A DNA stretch of 8,369 bases. Source: Octopus sinensis (taxonomy: Eukaryota). Below the pieces are notes generated by a model. It searched no databases and was not told where the DNA came from. It worked only from the letters and a program-made list of their open reading frames with translations. The DNA is taken from the NCBI RefSeq assembly GCF_006345805.1, contig NW_021828436.1, positions 1 through 8,369 on the forward strand, read 5' to 3'. Of this stretch, positions 1 through 6,204 are shown in pieces (within the stretch, counting starts at the first letter, position 1; every line of letters starts with the position of its first letter). A program made the translations under genes and the position numbers.

Positions 1-64
1 CAGTTCAATTTTCACTCATTATTTATATTTTTTCCTTTCTTTATATATGTATATATCGTGTGTG

Positions 65-95
<31 letters not shown>

Positions 96-294
96 ATCTG
101 TATGTATCATTCATCATCATTCATATATTTCACTCGTCATCATTCTAGGACCATACTCTCATTGATATGGGTGTTACACCTCTCTCTGAATCTCACCATT
201 CATCACAGTCCTTCATCATTGTCATACATATATGCACACACATCCACAAACACACGCACACACACACACGCATGTGTGTGTGAGTGTTTACGTC

Positions 295-529
295 TTTTTG
301 TGCTGACGTCACATGATAGCTGTAAACGAGAGTCCCCCGTCATAGGCGCCAGTGTCTTTCCATTTCCAACCTTCTGCCAAAACATGTCTGGCCGCAGAGG
401 AGAATATTGACCCTGCTTGGACACTGGTCAGGGTTGGCCAGAGGACTGGCAACCTGGCCATAGAAACTTTACCACAATAAATTTCATCTGACCCATGCAA
501 GCATGGAAAGGTGGACATTAAAAATGATG
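295..529 (+). mobile_element. SINE-like repeat, family A, 3' body and tail
   Basis: Ends in acccatgcaagcatggaaaggtggacattaaaaatgatg. Colinear over about 230 bp with the reverse complement of 4601-4856 (acccataccagcatggaaaagtggacattaaaacgatgatg) and shares its tail with 3970-3995. Start boundary is approximate. Confidence 0.8.
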
Positions 530-540
530 TGTGTGTGTGT

Positions 541-632
541 CTGAGGGATCGTGTGTTCAATTCCTGGACCAGGTGGTGCATTATGTTCTTGAGCAAAACC
601 CTTCACTTCATGTTGTTACAGTTCACTTAGCT
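541..632 (+). mobile_element. tRNA-derived SINE, family C, 5'-truncated head plus CORE-like segment
   Basis: B-box-like tgttcaattcc (554-564) followed by tgttcttgagcaaaacccttcacttcatgttgttacagttcacttagct. Aligns with the reverse complement of about 4410-4500 (ttcaattcctagaaaaggtggc...cttcctttcatactgtttcagtatactcggct). Confidence 0.75.
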
Positions 633-725
633 CTAGACGAGTGTCTTCTACTGCAACCCCCCCTAGGTCAACCAATTGCCCCGTGAGGGAACATGGTGGC
701 AGATTGAGAGCATACAGAAGCCAGT

Positions 726-763
726 TGTGTGTGTGTGTTTGTGTGTGTGTGTTTGTGTGTGTT

Positions 764-839
<76 letters not shown>
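726..839. repeat. Interrupted (TG)n microsatellite
   Basis: About 114 nt of TG with periodic TTTG interruptions; source of the VCVC/HTHT ORFs. Confidence 0.97.
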
Positions 840-865
840 CTTTTCTTCTCTCAAGTTGCCCCAGC

Positions 866-1063
866 CGTTCAAGAATTTGGACCTGGAAGATCTCCATTTC
901 CAGCGACTTCGAGGGCCACCTCCCAGTGGTGTTGGGCGTCAACGAAGAGCCCTTGACTACAACAGGACAACCAAAGTTTATTTAAGGTCCGGGGTCTCCC
1001 GTACCCTAAGCCCTTGACCATTACCTAATCACCCTTACCCGTCTTGTTGCTTAACAACAACAA
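866..1063 (+). mobile_element. 198-bp retro-insertion (unassigned family) with 14-bp TSD and (AAC)n tail
   Basis: Exact direct repeat caagttgccccagc at 852-865 and 1064-1077; aacaacaacaacaa runs into the second copy. Removing the insert and one repeat restores a family D tail. Confidence 0.8.
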
Positions 1064-1745
1064 CAAGTTGCCCCAGCATGGCGACAGTCCATTGTCTGAA
1101 CAACTGAAAGAATAAAGAACAAGAATGTCTTGAAATTTATGTAACAGCTTCTATTTTTGCTTCAGGAAATACTTTGTGGTAAACAAAGTATTCTTATTTA
1201 GCCCGGGTCAACCCTGGACAAGTAAACATTATATTCTCACAGCAGTGGTGGTGGATGGGGTAGCAGTTAAATGGATGAGTCTGTGATATAAGTGATCCTG
1301 ATGTCTATGACAGTGGAGGTGGTGGTTCAGTTACAGTAGGCTACTGATGTGTATGTGTGGTGGGTGGTATTACGAAAAAAAAAAAAGGAAAAAACCAAGG
1401 GGGAAAGCATTTGCTTATGTGTTGGAAAAAAAATTGATGAAAGAATTATCTCCCTTAGGACACTCTATCTATGATGTCACGCTCCAATTCTGCTTTGCAC
1501 CAAAAGTTGTATCCTGAAACATACATAAATACACACATTCATACATACACACACCTTTTCACATGTATACACATAACAGACTCATACACATGCATTAATG
1601 CATATATGTGTGTGTGTTTGTAATTAAGCCAATCTCTGTAATGTTTGATACTGTATTAAATATATATGAAAATTTCTTTTTATAAATGTCCATATGTATA
1701 ATTCTGTGTCTATCTTCCCCTCTCTCTCTCCCTCTTTCTCTCTCC

Positions 1746-1773
1746 ATATATATATATATATATATATATATAT
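1746..1773. repeat. (AT)14 microsatellite, left flank of the foldback element
   Basis: Pure AT dinucleotide run; the matching right flank (AT)6 is at 2001-2012. Confidence 0.97.
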
Positions 1774-1827
1774 GGAAAAAAAGTCAAGGGAGAAAATGCT
1801 AAAATAATTTTATAAAAAACATTTTAG

Positions 1828-1857
1828 TACCGGTTTCGGTCATTGAGACTTTTTCAA
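1828..1857 (-). ncRNA. Minimal hammerhead ribozyme-like motif, mirror copy (likely defective)
   Basis: Minus strand reads UUGAAAA-AGUC-UCAAU-GACC-GAAA-CCG-GUA. Stem II has an A.C closing mismatch and no stem I forms. Confidence 0.3.
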
Positions 1858-1916
1858 TTGTAAGCATGGAAAACAATTAAATTTTTCCAAAATTTAATCG
1901 TTTTCCATACTTGGAG

Positions 1917-1946
1917 TTGAAAAAGTCTCAATGACTGAAACCGGTA
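1917..1946 (+). ncRNA. Minimal type I hammerhead ribozyme-like motif (U3:A8 core variant)
   Basis: UUGAAAA (CUGANGA with compensatory C3U/G8A), stem II AGUC/GACU with a 5-nt loop, GAAA, palindromic ACCGGU stem III, and a GUA cleavage triplet. Stem I is weak (2 bp, 2 mismatches, 2 bp). Confidence 0.45.
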
Positions 1947-2190
1947 CTAAAATGCTTTTTATAAAATTATTTTAGCATTTTCTCCCTTGACTTTTTTTCC
2001 ATATATATATATCAACTTGTGTGTTCCTTTTCAACCTTCTACATTTATATATATATATATATTTATACACACACACACTCACCTATCAAATTGATTGAGG
2101 AATTCTAAGATTGCATCAGGGGACAAATATGTGGGGAGGAGCAAATGTAATTAAATCATTTCACTGCTATTTTATTTCTTATTTCACGAA

Positions 2191-2340
2191 GGCAGTAACT
2201 TGGCAAAATTCTGAGGGCACCGGACTAAATGCCAACTGTAATTGGTTACGGCCCTCTTTTCTCACCAGGTTCAGATTCCACCGAGGTCGACCTTGCCTTT
2301 TCCATCCTTCTTTTAGGACCAATATACAAAAGAACCAATT
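2191..2340 (+). mobile_element. tRNA-derived SINE, family B, diverged copy
   Basis: A-box-like tggcaaaattctgagg and B-box-like ggttcagattcc (2268-2279), then gaggtcgaccttgcctttccatcctt, which matches the reverse complement of aaggatgagaggcaaagttgacctc in the 2571-2907 copies. Confidence 0.75.
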
Positions 2341-2384
2341 CTATGCTCTTCTTGGTGTATATATTCCTTTTATAATTGTAATGG

Positions 2385-2445
2385 GGATTTTTCTACCATG
2401 ATACAAGCTAGGGGGGATGGATGCTGTCAGCCTTTGAATTGCAGA
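2385..2445 (+). repeat. Fragment of repeat family E
   Basis: 15-nt exact match gggggatggatgctg (2412-2426 vs 4201-4215), plus colinear ctacca and tttgaatt, with 4138-4276. Confidence 0.55.
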
Positions 2446-2550
2446 GGCCCACTTTCATTAGGAGAAAAACGCCAAAACTTGAAATACGGAAGTCTGATAA
2501 AGAATCATATATTCGTTAGCACTTGCAATGAAATAGACTATAACATCCAG

Positions 2551-2860
2551 CAACCTTAATAATCTATTAATTATAATAATCCTTTCTACTAAAGGCACAA
2601 GGCCTGAAATTTCATAAGAGGGGACAAATCGATTACATCGACCCCAGTGTATCACTGGTACTTAATTTATTGATTTTTGAAAGGATGAGAGGCAAAGTTG
2701 ACCTCAACCTTAATAATCTATTAATTATGATAATCCTTTCTACTAAAGGCACAAGGCCTGAAATTTCAGAAGAGGGGACAAATCGATTACATCGACCCCA
2801 GTGTTTCACTGGTACTTAATTTATTGATTTTTGAAAGGATGAGAGGCAAAGTTGACCTCA
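2551..2860. repeat. Tandem duplication, period 154 bp
   Basis: 2551-2704 vs 2705-2858 differ at only 3 positions (2575/2729, 2615/2769, 2651/2805); there is a 2-nt 'ca' junction microhomology. Confidence 0.97.
2571..2704 (-). mobile_element. SINE family B, 3' half (copy created by the tandem duplication)
   Basis: Near-identical to 2725-2858 but stops before the B box. Confidence 0.8.
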
Positions 2861-2907
2861 GTGGAATTTGAACTCAAAATACAGGGACAGGCCAAATGCT
2901 ACTAAGC
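2725..2907 (-). mobile_element. SINE family B, 5'-truncated
   Basis: Minus strand has B-box-like gagttcaaattcc followed by gaggtcaactttgcctctcatcctttc...aagtaccagtg...ggggtcgatgtaatcga. No A box. Confidence 0.8.
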
Positions 2908-3125
2908 GGGCCTTTTTATTATGAGTACAAAGGCCTTAGATATTTGGAGAGGAGTCTAAGTAGTTACATCGAAACCCCAGTGTTCAACTGGTACTAATTT
3001 TATCAACCCTGAAAGTATGAAAGTCAAAGCTGACTGTGACACGGTTTGAACTTAGAATATAAAGACAGATGAAAGGCCCCCAAGCATTTCGTCTGGTGTG
3101 CTAACGACTTTGCCAACTTGCTCCC
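2908..3125 (-). mobile_element. SINE family B, near full-length, more diverged
   Basis: Minus strand: A-box-like tggcaaagtcgttag, B-box-like agttcaaaccg (3042-3052), and a body colinear with 2725-2907 (gttacatcgaaaccccagtgttcaactggtac vs gattacatcgaccccagtgtttcactggtac). Confidence 0.8.
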
Positions 3126-3184
3126 TTCAATAATGTTTTGATAATAAACACAATATGACCGTTTTACATATTTATTAATACAAG

Positions 3185-3216
3185 TCTTTATTTTTTTACC
3201 TATTTTACAGGTGAGT
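3185..3216 (+). other. Juxtaposed 3' and 5' splice-site consensus (candidate recursive splice site / zero-length exon)
   Basis: tctttatttttttacctattttacag|gtgagt: 19 of 23 pyrimidines before CAG (3208-3210), then a perfect GTGAGT. A possible branch point ttaat lies at 3175-3179. Confidence 0.45.
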
Positions 3217-3280
3217 TCAACCAAAAATATACCATATTACATATATATTACATGAAAAGGGATTTGACAAATCCAGGCAG

Positions 3281-3330
3281 TATATATATACATACATATA
3301 TATACATATATATATATATATTTATATATA
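3281..3330. repeat. (TA)n/(TACA)n microsatellite
   Basis: Direct reading of the sequence. Confidence 0.95.
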
Positions 3331-3736
3331 GTATGTAAATATTCAGGTATTGTGATCTATTCATTTTCTTGTTTAGTTATAATTTTTTAATTTTGTTCTT
3401 AATATTTTGGCATCAGTTGTAAAATATTCTTGTTTTTATTTAGTACCACATTTCAGAAAACTTTTTTCATCTTTTTCTTTAACATTATCGTCACCACATC
3501 ATCCTGGTGTGAACGTTTTGACCACAAAACCATACCTGTACTAATTACATAGCCGCACCTGTACTGTCATAAAACAGTACCTGCTCTGATTATATAAAAA
3601 AAAATGGATCTCTCTCATAATGAATCTCTGACAGATTCATTATTTTTTTAAGCCCTTTTTTATTATCTGACACAAGATCACCTCCTCCAATGTCCCCTCA
3701 CCTCTCAAAATTCCTTGCTTTGCAGGTTACTTGGTG

Positions 3737-3995
3737 GCCCTGATGGTGCCACATAAAAAGCATCCAGTCTACACTGTGAAGTGGTTGGCATTTGGAAGGG
3801 CATCCAGCTGTAAAATTCACACCAAAACTGACCTTACCTGTGCTAGTGCCACGTACAAAGTACCCAATCCATTCTATAGAGTGGTTGGTGTTAGAAAGGG
3901 CATCCAGCTTAAACAGACACAGAAGCTTGATGCAGTCTCCTACCTGGCCAGCACCTGCCAAACCATCCGACCCATGCCAGCATAGAAGGCAGACC
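3737..3995 (+). mobile_element. SINE-like repeat with family A tail and two internal 100-bp-period units
   Basis: gtgccac...gtggttgg...aagggcatccagct occurs at 3746-3809 and 3846-3909 (49/64 identical). Tail is ccgacccatgccagcatagaaggcagac. Confidence 0.75.
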
Positions 3996-4137
3996 TTCAT
4001 CTTCCAAGTTGTTCTGGTTTGGAATTGTCATCGCTGCTTCTGTAGCTTTGCTTATTTTTCAGGGTAGAAGTGTTGGCCCTACACAAACCCATTTTTAACT
4101 CTGAGAAGAGGTGGTCCATTATTAGTCTGGCCCATAT

Positions 4138-4276
4138 CCTTTGACCTGTCCAGCAAGGGAAACCCTACCAGGTGCTTGCACTCCAAAGGGATACTAGCGA
4201 GGGGGATGGATGCTGCCAAGTTTTGAATTATCTCTCAGGGTTACTGAGGTATGCATGCCACCACATCACAATAAGG
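4138..4276 (+). mobile_element. Repeat family E; resembles (from memory) sequence near the 5' end of RTE-clade LINEs
   Basis: gacctgtccagcaagggaaaccctaccagg...ctctcagggttactgaggtatgcatgccacc. A partial second copy is at 2385-2445. The family assignment is recollection only. Confidence 0.45.
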
Positions 4277-4296
4277 ATTGAACCTGGTGGCGGTAT

Positions 4297-4549
4297 GGAC
4301 TAGACTCATTAGGCCAGAACTTATCCCAGTTTCCATGACTGTGAGTCAAAAGACAATCCTATTGACAGGACTCCAGCCCTCCACCAGGTTGACTCCTAGA
4401 TAGAGCTGGGACTCATTTTCAGCCGAGTATACTGAAACAGTATGAAAGGAAGTACTGTACTCATTCACACGATCTGCCACCTTTTCTAGGAATTGAACCA
4501 GCAACTTTATGATCAGGGACTCAATACTCTAAGCACTAGGCTGGGCACC
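4297..4549 (-). mobile_element. tRNA-derived SINE, family C, near full-length, diverged
   Basis: Minus strand: A-box-like cagcctagtgct (4532-4543), B box ggttcaattcc (4489-4499), a CORE-like middle homologous to 541-632, and a tail gaaactgggataagttctggcctaatgag. Confidence 0.75.
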
Positions 4550-4600
4550 ATTAATATCCCTTCTGGGCTTCCATATGCATATTCCACTCAAAACTAGTAT

Positions 4601-4856
4601 ATCATCATCGTCGTCATCATCATCGTTTTAATGTCCACTTTTCCATGCTGGTATGGGTTGGACAGTTTTCTTGAGGCAGATTTTCTATGGCTGGATGCTT
4701 TTCCTGTCATCAACCCTCACCTGTTTCCAAGCAAGGTAATAGTCGCCCCATGGCCAGACGACATGTTTTTCATGGCAGATAGGAAATGGATGACACTGCT
4801 TGTATGACAGTGGCACTCATTTACAACTATTGCATGATGTCAATACAGGGAGACAC
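4601..4856 (-). mobile_element. SINE-like repeat, family A, with (ATG/ACG)n tail
   Basis: Reverse complement is colinear with 295-529; the trinucleotide tail is at 4601-4625. Confidence 0.8.
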
Positions 4857-5025
4857 TTGACACTTGCACACACACAAAAGCAGGAATAATATTTTGATAT
4901 TATTTATTTCCTTTTACACGTTTCATTTGATATTAGAAACTTCTTACAGAATTCAATGTGTGTGTGTACGTATATATATTTACACACACACATACACACT
5001 CGTGCACATGTGTGAGTATGTATAT

Positions 5026-5034
<9 letters not shown>

Positions 5035-5074
<40 letters not shown>
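5035..5074. repeat. (TA)20 microsatellite
   Basis: Pure run abutting the 3' end of the family D SINE. Confidence 0.97.
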
Positions 5075-5075
<1 letters not shown>

Positions 5076-5454
5076 TCTTTTACTTGTTTCAGTCATTTGA
5101 CTGCAGCCATGCTGGAGCACAGCCTTCAGCAAATCAAACCCGGGACTTATTCTTTGTAAGCCTATTACTTATTCTATCGGTCTCTTTGCTGAGCTACTAA
5201 GTTACGGGGAGGTAAACACACCAGCATCGGTTGTCAAGCGATGTTTGGGGGAGGGGGGGACAAACAAACACACACACACACAAGCATACACACACACATA
5301 CATATATACGACACGCTTCTTTCAGTTTCCATCTACCAAATCCACTCACAAGGCTATAGTAGAAGACACTTGCCCAAGATGCCACGCAGTGGGACTGAAC
5401 CTAGAACCATGTGGTTGGTAAGCAAGCTCCTTACCACACAGCCACTCCTGCACC
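5073..5454 (-). mobile_element. Full-length tRNA-derived CORE-like SINE, family D (typical abundant octopus SINE, from memory)
   Basis: Minus strand: A box tggctgtgtggt (5433-5444), B box ggttcagtccc (5391-5401), CORE-like cttgggcaagtgtctt, internal (TG)n, and tail gtcaaatgactgaaacaagtaaaagagta. Confidence 0.9.
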
Positions 5455-5854
5455 TTTATGTATAAACACAACATATGTATTATGTGTATATATTAGAAGA
5501 AATGAGGTACTCAGAAAATCGGATGGTTTTATATTTACAGATATTGATTTGTATATTACATGTTTTTATACATCATATAACTTATATATACACACACGTC
5601 TATATATATATATATATACACATACTTACACATATGTGTATGTATTTATATGTATGTATGTGTGTGTAGATAGAAAGTGTAGAAGCCCTATATATATATA
5701 TATGTGTATATATATGTATATATATATATTGTATTGTTAAACATGTCCTTGCCTTTTTGTATTGCTTCCATTCTGTGTCTGCTGTGTAACCCTCGGCCAG
5801 ACCTCACTGAGATGATCTTATGATCAATGCCATACCTTCCAAAACAGCCTACCA

Positions 5855-5925
5855 CCACACAGAAGGACAGAACCTGAAACCATGTGGTTGCAAAAAAACG
5901 AACCAACCACATAACCATGGGGGCC
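5855..5925 (-). mobile_element. Degenerate family D-type tRNA-derived head with a different body
   Basis: ccacacagaaggacagaacctgaaaccatgtggttg matches 5382-5417 at 30/36; the downstream body (5740-5854) does not match family D. Confidence 0.6.
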
Positions 5926-6033
5926 ACCAGTGCCCTCTTGCACCGAGACTAGGATCTGTCTGATAATTTAAAGGGGGGGGGGGAAATTTCTCCTCTCTTC
6001 GCTCCTTATTTATTTATTTATTTATTTAATTAC

Positions 6034-6153
6034 CAGGGCCTGAAGGAAGCGGTAGGGGTAGGGGGTAGGAGTGGGGGGTGTACTGTGCCCTACTGCCTTC
6101 CATAATATCTACCGGGTCCATCTCCATAGAGGCTCCTACAATTTGGTTCTCCC
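6034..6153 (-). CDS. Candidate 120-nt phase 1-1 coding exon, (G)ENQIVGASMEMDPVDIMEGSRAQYTPHSYPLPLPLPSGP(G); product unknown
   Basis: Complex sequence with no similarity to repeats seen in the window. Open frame bounded by aaagccag| and CTG|gtaatt. Both splice sites are mediocre and no homolog is recognised. Confidence 0.22.
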
Positions 6154-6204
6154 CTGGCTTTGATGTATGTAATAGCAGTGGGTTGGGTAGGAGAAGGGGA
6201 GGTA

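What the first reader, a model, noticed from the sequence alone, without database searches (positions are those of the whole stretch)
1774..2000. TA-targeted 227-bp foldback element carrying two mirror hammerhead-ribozyme-like cores with a compensatory U3:A8 pair
Seen: a full palindrome (112-bp arms, no indels, 7 mismatches, 3-nt loop) between (AT)14 and (AT)6. Each arm reads UUGAAAA-[AGUC ucaau GAC(U/C)]-GAAA-C-CG-G-UA (1917-1946 on +, 1828-1857 on -). Established: the hammerhead core is CUGANGA/GAAA/NUH; positions 3 and 8 base-pair in the active fold and U3:A8 is a known natural covariation. Penelope-like retroelements carry minimal type I hammerheads with a palindromic stem III (here ACCGGU) that cleave as dimers, and they often show inverted pLTR copies. 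Both core deviations are exactly the compensatory pair. Four of the 7 arm mismatches cluster at 1858-1865/1909-1916, just 5' of the core where stem I would form. Inference: what looks like a DNA MITE may be a non-autonomous, microsatellite-targeting Penelope derivative mobilised through RNA. Caveats: stem I is weak, and the long hairpin would compete with the ribozyme fold, so this copy may be inactive.
Basis: partly seen in the sequence, partly recalled or inferred. Interest (0 to 1): 0.75.

Follow-up and report, generated by a model that had tools for sequence, protein, structure and literature searches.

The report
TA-flanked foldback repeat, hammerhead look-alike
A 227-bp near-perfect DNA palindrome sits inside a TA microsatellite of octopus-like DNA; it is most likely an ordinary foldback transposon relic, and its hammerhead-ribozyme-like string fails most tests that could be run here.

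Summary
There are two 112-nt arms (1774-1885 and 1889-2000) with 7 mismatches, no indels and a TCC loop, lying between (AT)14 and (AT)6. As RNA the element folds at -151 kcal/mol (z = -28).

The string UUGAAAA-AGUC-ucaau-GACU-GAAA-CCGG-UA is at 1917-1946(+). Its mirror at 1828-1857(-) simply follows from the palindrome, and there helix II closes with an A·C mismatch.

The hammerhead reading mostly fails:
- No Rfam hammerhead model matches, even at E<=10 on 80 nt.
- Helix I has 2 contiguous pairs in one arm and none at the junction in the other.
- The G10.1-C11.1 pair typical of Penelope hammerheads is absent.
- The fourth helix II pair looks like a CpG-decay product.
- The two cores lie on opposite strands, so one transcript cannot form the dimer.
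- The long hairpin out-competes the ribozyme fold completely.

Against dismissal, the match is expected only about 1-5e-4 times per element by chance. The U3:A8 pair, palindromic helix III, inverted copies and (TA)n targeting all have Penelope precedents in the literature.

No second copy could be reached with these tools, so covariation, target-site duplication and family membership remain untested.

Best reading is a TA-flanked foldback MITE-like repeat (about 0.5). A Penelope-derived inverted pair is about 0.17, and a local palindrome about 0.2.

The parts
1746..1773 (.). (AT)14 microsatellite flanking the element on the left. It is self-complementary, so it extends the palindrome and hides any TA target-site duplication.
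   Evidence: (TA)>=5 tracts cover only 4.1% of the window.
1774..1885 (.). Left arm of the foldback element, 112 nt.
   Evidence: 105 of 112 positions are complementary to the right arm, with no indels.
1886..1888 (.). Central 3-nt spacer TCC.
1889..2000 (.). Right arm of the foldback element, 112 nt.
2001..2012 (.). (AT)6 microsatellite flanking the element on the right.
1917..1946 (+). Hammerhead-like string: U3 U4 G5 A6 A7 A8 A9 / AGUC-ucaau-GACU / G12 A13 A14 / A15.1-CCGG-U16.1 / A17. It is the only place in the window that meets a minimal descriptor with helix II of 4 bp or more.
   Evidence: No Rfam hammerhead hit. The hammerhead fold scores +4.3 kcal/mol against an MFE of -10.4.
1828..1857 (-). 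Mirror copy of the string on the other strand. It has C instead of U at 11.1, so helix II is 3 bp closed by an A·C mismatch, and helix I has no pair at the junction.
   Evidence: No Rfam hammerhead hit.
1858..1865 (.). Cluster of 4 of the 7 arm mismatches, partnered with 1909-1916. This is where the 5' strand of helix I would lie, and the changes are not compensated on the 3' strand.
   Evidence: clustering P = 0.018.

Best explanation
The feature is a short, non-coding, AT-rich foldback repeat inserted in a (TA)n microsatellite of an octopod-like genome. It is two 112-bp inverted arms joined by 3 nt.

The most likely origin is a miniature inverted-repeat element left by a TA-targeting cut-and-paste (DDE, Tc1/mariner-like) transposon, essentially its two terminal inverted repeats joined after loss of the interior. 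With a TA duplication, the element proper would be 1773-2001 (TGGAAAAAAAG...CTTTTTTTCCA).

Shown here:
- the palindrome and its TA flanks;
- the lack of coding capacity;
- a decay pattern dominated by transitions and CpG loss, about 6.5% between the arms.

Inferred:
- mobility as DNA;
- that any transcript folds into a 112-bp double-stranded hairpin, a likely small-RNA precursor, rather than into a ribozyme.

The hammerhead-like string is best read as a coincidental or, at most, long-dead resemblance. In this copy it cannot work as a self-cleaving ribozyme.
For: Palindrome and flanks:
- Whole-length inverted repeat with no indels and a 3-nt spacer, folding at z = -28.
- It is flanked on both sides by (AT)n, while such tracts cover only about 4% of the window and of an Octopus vulgaris locus. 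That points to TA-directed insertion.

No coding capacity:
- No ORF over 30 aa inside the element.
- No Pfam domain in six frames of about 1-4960.

Genomic context:
- The window shares its SINE-like repeats with an O. vulgaris chromosome at 74-86% identity.
- That genome is reported to hold 73 Tc1-Mariner and 65 MITE families among recently active elements (PMC13282606).

Against a working hammerhead:
- No hammerhead model of Rfam 15 matches at gathering score or at E<=10, even on 80-nt stretches.
- Helix I is G-C, A-U, then two G·A mismatches, then U-A, U-A in the right arm. In the left arm the junction position is unpaired and only three scattered pairs exist.
- The hammerhead fold costs +4.3 and +10.3 kcal/mol, against MFEs of -10.4 and -8.1.
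- Helix II pairing probability is 0.00 in the full element and 0.03 in the right arm alone.
- The closing pair is A-U or A·C, not the G10.1-C11.1 said to be highly conserved in Penelope hammerheads.
- The U at 11.1 sits where the other arm has CpG. Two of the 7 mismatches are at CpG (P = 0.05), in a region with CpG o/e of 0.41. The ancestral state was therefore probably C, giving an A·C mismatch.
- The two cores lie on opposite strands, so no single transcript carries the two copies that a dimeric hammerhead needs.
Against: - No second copy was found: none in the window, none in 24 kb of O. vulgaris DNA, and none in any searchable collection.
- The multi-copy nature that defines a MITE is therefore unproven.
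- The target-site duplication cannot be read in an (AT)n context.
- No autonomous partner or matching terminal repeat is known.
- The hammerhead-like match is not trivial. With an order-3 octopod background it is expected 0.57 times per Mb per strand (helix II of 4 bp or more), or 0.97 (3 bp plus a 1x1 mismatch). That is about 1-5e-4 per element.
- Each of its oddities has a documented Penelope precedent: U3-A8, palindromic helix III, a 2-bp helix I in D. virilis, paired motifs on opposite strands 100-700 bp apart, and a (TA)n bias.
Confidence: 0.5

Rival explanations
1. Penelope-like origin. The two arms are the 3'-terminal 112 nt of a (TA)n-targeting Penelope-like element or of its non-autonomous derivative. 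They were laid down head-to-head by reverse transcription primed on both strands of the cut target, or by snap-back of the cDNA. The outer ends are then the RNA's 3' end, and the string is a decayed minimal hammerhead of the U3:A8 type.
For: - The sense strands of the two strings diverge from the centre, with the presumed 3' ends abutting (TA)n.
- That is the geometry of an inverted 5'-truncated copy and of an enzyme that cleaves and extends both strands (PMC11167929).
- (TA)n is the preferred target of Naiads, and a bias was proposed for Neptune. Naiad remnants occur in Octopus species.
- Penelope-like elements are present and partly recent in O. vulgaris.
- U3-A8, palindromic 15.2-16.2, a 2-bp helix I and dual motifs on opposite strands are all described.
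- Chance expectation of the string is about 1-5e-4 per element.
- The right-arm homodimer MFE does form both helix II hairpins and the intermolecular ACCGGU helix.
Against: - No Rfam hammerhead hit.
- The features reported to emerge consistently in Penelope hammerheads are absent: helix II of 6-8 bp, a bulge between positions 9 and 10.1, G10.1-C11.1, and helix I of 4-5 bp.
- The inferred ancestral state at 11.1 makes the motif worse, not better.
- The (TA)n-targeting Naiads lack canonical hammerheads.
- Two independently truncated copies would not be expected to break at the same nucleotide. Only the snap-back version explains the exact symmetry.
- No RT or GIY-YIG remnant nearby.
- Chance alone predicts about 3000-8000 such matches in a 2.7-Gb genome.
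Confidence: 0.17
2. Local, non-mobile palindrome. A fold-back inverted duplication arose in situ next to an unstable (TA)n tract, through hairpin or cruciform-induced breakage and snap-back repair as in palindromic AT-rich repeats. The element would then be single-copy, and the hammerhead-like string accidental.
For: - No other copy was found anywhere.
- The symmetry is exact about a 3-nt spacer whose surroundings (AAATTT...AAATTT) are themselves self-complementary.
- (TA)n tracts are very frequent here, and the flanking tracts continue the palindrome.
Against: - The amount of source-genome DNA searched was tiny (about 32 kb), so absence of copies means little.
- The unequal (AT)14 and (AT)6 flanks and the sharp GG...CC ends look more like an insertion into a pre-existing tract.
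- The size, AT-richness and TA context are those of typical MITEs.
Confidence: 0.2
3. Sequencing or assembly artefact: a chimeric fold-back read that produced a false palindrome.
For: Fold-back chimeras are a known artefact of long-read and amplification-based libraries (general knowledge, not tested here).
Against: - The arms differ at 7 positions with a biological signature: 6 transitions, 2 of them at CpG.
- The palindrome is short, internal to the window and bounded by unrelated unique flanks.
Confidence: 0.03

Closest known systems
Palindromic Tc1/mariner-derived MITEs, such as human MADE1 (from Hsmar1, the source of the miR-548 hairpins) and Stowaway-like elements
   Same: Small, non-coding and AT-rich. 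Almost the whole element is two inverted arms around a few central bases. TA context at both ends. The transcript is a long perfect hairpin, and Rfam miRNA-hairpin models give sub-threshold generic hits.
   Different: There is no sequence similarity to any known family that I could test. Copy number, target-site duplication and an autonomous partner are unknown. The arms (112 nt) are longer than those of MADE1. The comparison with MADE1 rests on my own knowledge, not on a tool result.
Minimal type I hammerheads of Penelope-like elements (Cervera & de la Pena 2014, PMC4209133), including the U3-A8 Cercyon variant and dual motifs on opposite strands
   Same: All invariant core positions are present with the documented U3:A8 pair. 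Helix III is reduced to A15.1-U16.1 around a palindromic CCGG. The cleavage triplet is GUA. Two motifs lie close together on opposite strands. The DNA is AT-rich.
   Different: Helix II is 3-4 bp instead of 6-8. There is no G10.1-C11.1 pair and no clean bulge between positions 9 and 10.1. Helix I is at most 2 contiguous pairs. No Rfam hammerhead score. No adjacent pseudo-LTR or ORF. The two motifs are exact palindromic partners rather than independently truncated copies.
(TA)n-targeting Penelope-like clades (Naiad; Neptune proposed), with inverted 5'-truncated copies (Craig et al. 2021, PMC8557442)
   Same: Insertion in a (TA)n microsatellite that hides the target-site duplication. Inverted-repeat architecture. 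Naiad remnants are reported in Octopus species.
   Different: Naiads lack canonical hammerheads. There is no RT or EN remnant here, and no 30-40-bp 'tail' asymmetry can be recognised. The element is only 227 bp and perfectly symmetric.
Metazoan non-LTR retrozymes (Cervera & de la Pena 2020, PMC7229834; Li et al. 2026 preprint)
   Same: Non-coding, low-GC units of a few hundred nt that carry a type I hammerhead with a weak helix III.
   Different: Retrozymes are head-to-tail tandem repeats with one hammerhead per unit on the same strand, which is what allows dimeric cleavage and circularisation. This element is a single inverted pair.

Membership tests
Hammerhead ribozyme (type I, minimal Penelope type) | Invariant core: C3 U4 G5 A6 N7 G8 A9, G12 A13 A14, A15.1-U16.1, H17 | tested here: met
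   Both arms read U3 U4 G5 A6 A7 A8 A9 ... G12 A13 A14 A15.1 ... U16.1 A17. C3:G8 is replaced by U3:A8, a covariation reported in Cercyon Penelope-like elements. Allowing it raises the chance rate of the descriptor about 5-fold in this AT-rich background.
Hammerhead ribozyme (type I, minimal Penelope type) | Helix II abutting A9 and G12; in Penelope hammerheads 6-8 bp with a conserved G10.1-C11.1 pair and a bulge after position 9 | tested here: not met
   The right arm has 4 bp with A10.1-U11.1. The left arm has 3 bp closed by A·C. The U at 11.1 is probably derived by CpG decay. Pairing probability is 0.00-0.03 in context.
Hammerhead ribozyme (type I, minimal Penelope type) | Helix I formed by the strands 5' of position 3 and 3' of position 17 (4-5 bp in Penelope hammerheads; 2 bp in the D. 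virilis variant) | tested here: not met
   The right arm has G-C, A-U, G·A, G·A, U-A, U-A. In the left arm the junction position is unpaired and only three scattered pairs exist. The full hammerhead fold scores +4.3 and +10.3 kcal/mol. The four clustered arm differences fall in the 5' strand and are not compensated.
Hammerhead ribozyme (type I, minimal Penelope type) | Short helix III with palindromic 15.2-16.2 and loop, enabling a dimer | tested here: met
   ACCGGU is present in both arms. The intermolecular 6-bp helix appears in the homodimer MFE of the right arm.
Hammerhead ribozyme (type I, minimal Penelope type) | Two copies on the same RNA (tandem) so that the dimer can form in cis | tested here: not met
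   The two strings lie on opposite strands. A transcript of either strand carries one core plus its perfect complement, and folds into a -151 kcal/mol hairpin.
Hammerhead ribozyme (type I, minimal Penelope type) | Recognition by curated covariance models (the hammerhead families of Rfam release 15) | tested here: not met
   No hammerhead hit at gathering score, or at E<=10 on 381 nt and on 80 nt around each core. Caveat: the minimal Penelope variants may be poorly represented in these models.
Hammerhead ribozyme (type I, minimal Penelope type) | Covariation of helices and of the 3:8 pair across family copies; self-cleavage | not testable with these tools
Penelope-like element or non-autonomous derivative | Adjacent RT plus GIY-YIG ORF, or sequence identity of the arm with a pseudo-LTR or 3' end of such an element | tested here: inconclusive
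   No Pfam domain appears in six frames of about 1-4960, but a non-autonomous copy needs none. No octopod Penelope-like sequence was available for comparison: supplements are not held and the protein searches were exhausted.
Penelope-like element or non-autonomous derivative | Insertion signature: tandem or inverted 5'-truncated copies, optional 30-40-bp tail, microsatellite target | tested here: inconclusive
   An inverted pair with the presumed 3' ends outward in (TA)n is compatible. The exact symmetry, with both arms ending at the same base, is not what independent truncation predicts.
MITE (non-autonomous class II element, TA-targeting) | Terminal inverted repeats, small size, AT-richness, no coding capacity | tested here: met
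MITE (non-autonomous class II element, TA-targeting) | Target-site duplication of fixed length (TA) | tested here: inconclusive
   TA can be read on both sides (1771-1772 and 2002-2003) if the element is taken as 1773-2001. In an (AT)n context any even-length duplication would fit.
MITE (non-autonomous class II element, TA-targeting) | Multi-copy family with common ends, and terminal repeats shared with an autonomous transposon | not testable with these tools
   No eukaryotic genome collection is searchable by DNA here. Only 32 kb of octopod-like DNA was in hand, and it holds no other copy.

The most novel reading that the evidence does not exclude
The element belongs to an undescribed family of very short, non-autonomous Penelope derivatives that mimic MITEs. 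These would be snap-back or twin-primed cDNA pairs of the last ~112 nt of a (TA)n-targeting Penelope-like RNA, each arm carrying a U3:A8 minimal hammerhead with an unusually short helix II. If so, part of what repeat annotators call TA-flanked foldback MITEs in cephalopods would really be retroelement products.
Probability: 0.15. Interest if true: 0.5.

Novelty: new member of a known kind. Interest (0 to 1): 0.27.

Why it matters
If it is an ordinary foldback MITE, it matters little beyond repeat annotation. It would be one more TA-flanked hairpin element, a possible source of hairpin small RNAs, and a cruciform-prone site in a microsatellite-rich region.

If the Penelope reading were right, it would show that a retroelement can leave MITE-like palindromes in (TA)n tracts. 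It would also extend the range of minimal hammerhead variants to U3:A8 with a 3-4-bp helix II. Even then, dual Penelope hammerheads on opposite strands and (TA)n targeting are already described, so the gain would be incremental.

The practical lesson is that a relaxed hammerhead descriptor is expected thousands of times by chance in an AT-rich 2.7-Gb genome. Single-copy matches therefore need family-level covariation before they mean anything.

Tried and rejected
1. Exact-pattern scans for two conserved 21-22-mers of the arm:
- viral contigs: 0 hits;
- GTDB genomes: 0 hits;
- JGI metagenomes: one hit, L001. It is a chance 21-mer inside a coding-looking contig that has no inverted repeats of 20 nt or more.

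2. Reaching genomic copies through protein space. I used the three reading frames of the element joined together, with X at stops. No hit at E<=10.

3. Reaching the source genome through a repeat-derived ORF (3731-3985): no related protein. An exact look-up of the neighbouring ORF 2111-2401 was not on record.

It gave one O. vulgaris locus of 24.3 kb. That locus confirmed shared SINE-like repeats but held no copy of the element. Its long 'palindromes' are plain (TA)n.

5. A literal search of 8 million papers for six sequence strings of the element: 0 papers.

6. Supplements with Penelope consensus sequences are not held. Lunse et al. 2017 is not held.

7. The Rfam miRNA-model hits (MIR7533 at 70 bits against a gathering score of 230, and others) were rejected as generic long-hairpin matches.

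8. ARAGORN found no tRNA-like gene in the window.

9. Six-frame Pfam scans were run only on about 1-4960. The microsatellite-dominated remainder was not scanned.

Full report
**What is there**

The window is eukaryotic, non-coding and packed with microsatellites and SINE-like repeats.

At 1774-2000 lie two 112-nt arms that are reverse complements of each other at 105 of 112 positions. There are no indels, and the arms are separated by TCC. (AT)14 precedes the element and (AT)6 follows it. Because (AT)n is self-complementary, the tool extends the palindrome to 124-nt arms.

As RNA the element folds into one hairpin of -151 kcal/mol, against -35.8 +/- 4.1 for shuffles (z = -28).

**Where it comes from**

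A cephalopod rhodopsin, used only as a handle, led to a 24.3-kb stretch of an Octopus vulgaris chromosome. Three repeat families of the window recur there at 74-86% identity: 5073-5463, 2557-2907 and 2925-3121. The window is therefore octopod or closely related DNA.

A recent repeat annotation of O. vulgaris lists both Tc1-Mariner/MITE families and Penelope-like elements (PMC13282606). Both candidate origins are therefore available in such a genome.

(TA)>=5 tracts cover 4.1% of the window and 3.8% of the O. vulgaris locus. Sitting inside one is unlikely for a random insertion, but it is not extraordinary.

**The hammerhead-like string**

Positions 1917-1946(+) read UUGAAAA AGUC ucaau GACU GAAA CCGG U A. 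The other strand of the left arm reads the same, with C for U at position 11.1. That mirror copy follows automatically from the palindrome and adds no evidence.

All invariant core positions are present if U3:A8 is accepted in place of C3:G8. That covariation is indeed reported for Cercyon Penelope-like elements. So are palindromic helix III, action as dimers, a 2-bp helix I in D. virilis, and pairs of motifs on opposite strands 100-700 bp apart (PMC4209133).

**Tests of membership**

- No hammerhead model of Rfam 15 matches at gathering score or at E<=10, whether 381 nt or only 80 nt around each core is searched. The hits that do appear are generic long-hairpin miRNA models far below threshold.
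- A minimal descriptor finds only the right arm. The descriptor was: core with C3:G8 or U3:A8, helix II of 4 bp or more abutting the core, GAAA, a 0-4-nt palindromic insert, U, H.
- Helix I is G-C, A-U, then two G·A, then U-A, U-A on the right. On the left the junction position is unpaired, and only three scattered pairs remain.
- The complete hammerhead fold scores +4.3 and +10.3 kcal/mol, against MFEs of -10.4 and -8.1.
- Helix II is 4 bp (A-U closing) or 3 bp (A·C closing). It lacks the G10.1-C11.1 pair, the 6-8-bp length and the clean bulge after position 9, which the 2014 study found to emerge consistently in Penelope hammerheads.
- Helix II has probability 0.00 in the full transcript and 0.03 in the right arm alone.
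- The two cores are on opposite strands, so a single transcript cannot form the dimer that a one-base-pair helix III requires.
- In isolation, two right-arm RNAs do form both helix II hairpins and the intermolecular ACCGGU helix in the predicted dimer MFE. A trans dimer is therefore conceivable, but only for an RNA that lacks the other arm.

**Decay pattern**

Six of the seven arm differences are transitions. Two lie where one arm keeps CpG and the other has TpG/CpA (1838/1936 and 1875/1899; P = 0.05). The region has a CpG o/e of 0.41 after masking microsatellites.

The likelier ancestral base at 11.1 is therefore C. That means the fourth helix II pair of the right arm was created by neutral decay, and the ancestral motif was a poorer hammerhead than the present one. 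This is the opposite of what a decaying ribozyme predicts. With only two sequences, the direction of change is an inference.

**Is the string chance?**

I used an order-3 background trained on the window plus the O. vulgaris locus.
- The descriptor occurs 0.57 times per Mb per strand.
- A variant that fits both arms (3-bp helix II closed by a 1x1 mismatch) occurs 0.97 times per Mb per strand.
- Simpler backgrounds give 0.1-3 per Mb.
- That amounts to about 1-5e-4 expected matches in this element, but roughly 3000-8000 in a 2.7-Gb genome.

The match is thus unlikely for this one element, yet of a kind that chance produces in thousands per genome. On its own it cannot decide the question.

**What could not be done**

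The decisive evidence is a set of genomic copies, and none could be obtained.
- DNA scans of the viral, prokaryotic and metagenomic collections gave nothing, apart from one chance 21-mer.
- Two attempts to reach copies through predicted proteins failed.
- The window and the 24-kb octopus locus hold no other copy.
- No paper contains the sequence, and the Penelope consensus supplements are not held.

Covariation, target-site duplication, empty sites and comparison with Penelope 3' ends or with transposon terminal repeats are therefore all untested.

**Most likely explanation**

A TA-flanked foldback repeat of the MITE kind. It would be the two terminal inverted repeats of a TA-targeting DDE transposon joined after loss of the interior, inserted in or beside a (TA)n tract, and since decayed by about 6.5% between arms (JC distance 0.065).

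Any transcript would form a 112-bp perfect duplex, a plausible substrate for small-RNA processing. At the DNA level the element is a cruciform-prone palindrome. I put this reading at about 0.5.

- Shown: the structure, the flanks, the non-coding nature, and the failure of the ribozyme fold.
- Inferred: the mode of movement and the fate of the RNA.

**Rivals**

- *Penelope-derived inverted pair (about 0.17).* The presumed sense strands diverge from the centre, with the presumed 3' ends in (TA)n. This matches inverted 5'-truncated copies and an enzyme that cleaves and extends both target strands. (TA)n is the preferred target of Naiads, which leave remnants in Octopus. Against it: those (TA)n-targeting Naiads lack canonical hammerheads, the exact symmetry of the arms needs a snap-back event rather than two truncations, and the motif lacks the family's emergent features.
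- *In-situ fold-back duplication next to an unstable (TA)n tract (about 0.2).* It fits the absence of other copies, but very little DNA was searched.
- *Assembly artefact (about 0.03).* It is unlikely given seven biologically patterned differences between the arms.

**Comparison with known systems, and novelty**

In architecture the element is closest to palindromic Tc1/mariner-derived MITEs. In its internal string it is closest to the minimal Penelope hammerheads. It cannot be filed as a hammerhead, because helix I, helix II and the covariance models were tested and not met. Its filing as a MITE is provisional, because copy number and target-site duplication could not be tested.

Either way it would be a new member of a known kind. 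Even the most novel reading would be an incremental extension of published Penelope biology. Interest is therefore modest.

Noticed in passing
window 2551-2860, with a third diverged copy at about 2925-3121: A 154-bp unit repeated in tandem at 98% identity (score 599). It carries a SINE-like sequence (…GGCACAAGGCCTGAAATTTCA…CGACCCCAGTG…CTGGTACTTAATTTAT…). Related copies occur in the O. vulgaris locus L002 at 77-86% identity. ARAGORN calls no tRNA in it.
   Followed up: partly
window 5073-5463: A roughly 390-bp interspersed repeat (…TCATTTGACTGCAGCCATGCTGGAGCAC…, with an internal (CA)n/(TA)n stretch) matches L002 twice, at 19319-19747 and 20155-20507, with 74-77% identity. This is the main evidence that the window is octopod-like DNA.
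   Followed up: partly
window 6885-7140: A minisatellite of 54-62-bp units, each made of (AC)n(AT)n plus the unique core ACATACGCAGTCACAAACGTGT. There are about 3.2 copies at 82-88% identity, inside a 300-bp AC-rich tract with strong GC skew (-0.58).
   Followed up: no
window 6218-6317 and 6454-6514: A (GGT)n/(GGC)n trinucleotide tract is followed 175 nt later by a roughly complementary (CCA/CCT)n tract (61-nt arms, 70% complementary), forming a loose inverted pair of microsatellites.
   Followed up: no
whole window: Strong CpG depletion: o/e 0.39, or 0.41 after masking dinucleotide repeats. The O. vulgaris rhodopsin locus L002 has 0.84. This suggests the window lies in a methylated or otherwise CpG-decaying compartment.
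   Followed up: partly
L001 64-84 (JGI metagenome contig Ga0206696_1310221): The only collection hit to a 21-mer of the arm lies in a 1156-bp contig that reads like a repetitive surface-protein gene. It has no inverted repeats of 20 nt or more and no further similarity, so it is a chance match.
   Followed up: yes
window 3698-4067: A repeat with the motif …GGTGCCACATAAAAAGCATCCAGTCTACACTGTGAAGTGGTTGGCATTTGGAAGGGCATCCAGCTGTAAAA… occurs twice in tandem-like fashion (about 3740-3830 and 3850-3910). Its ORFs have no relatives in the protein database.
   Followed up: partly
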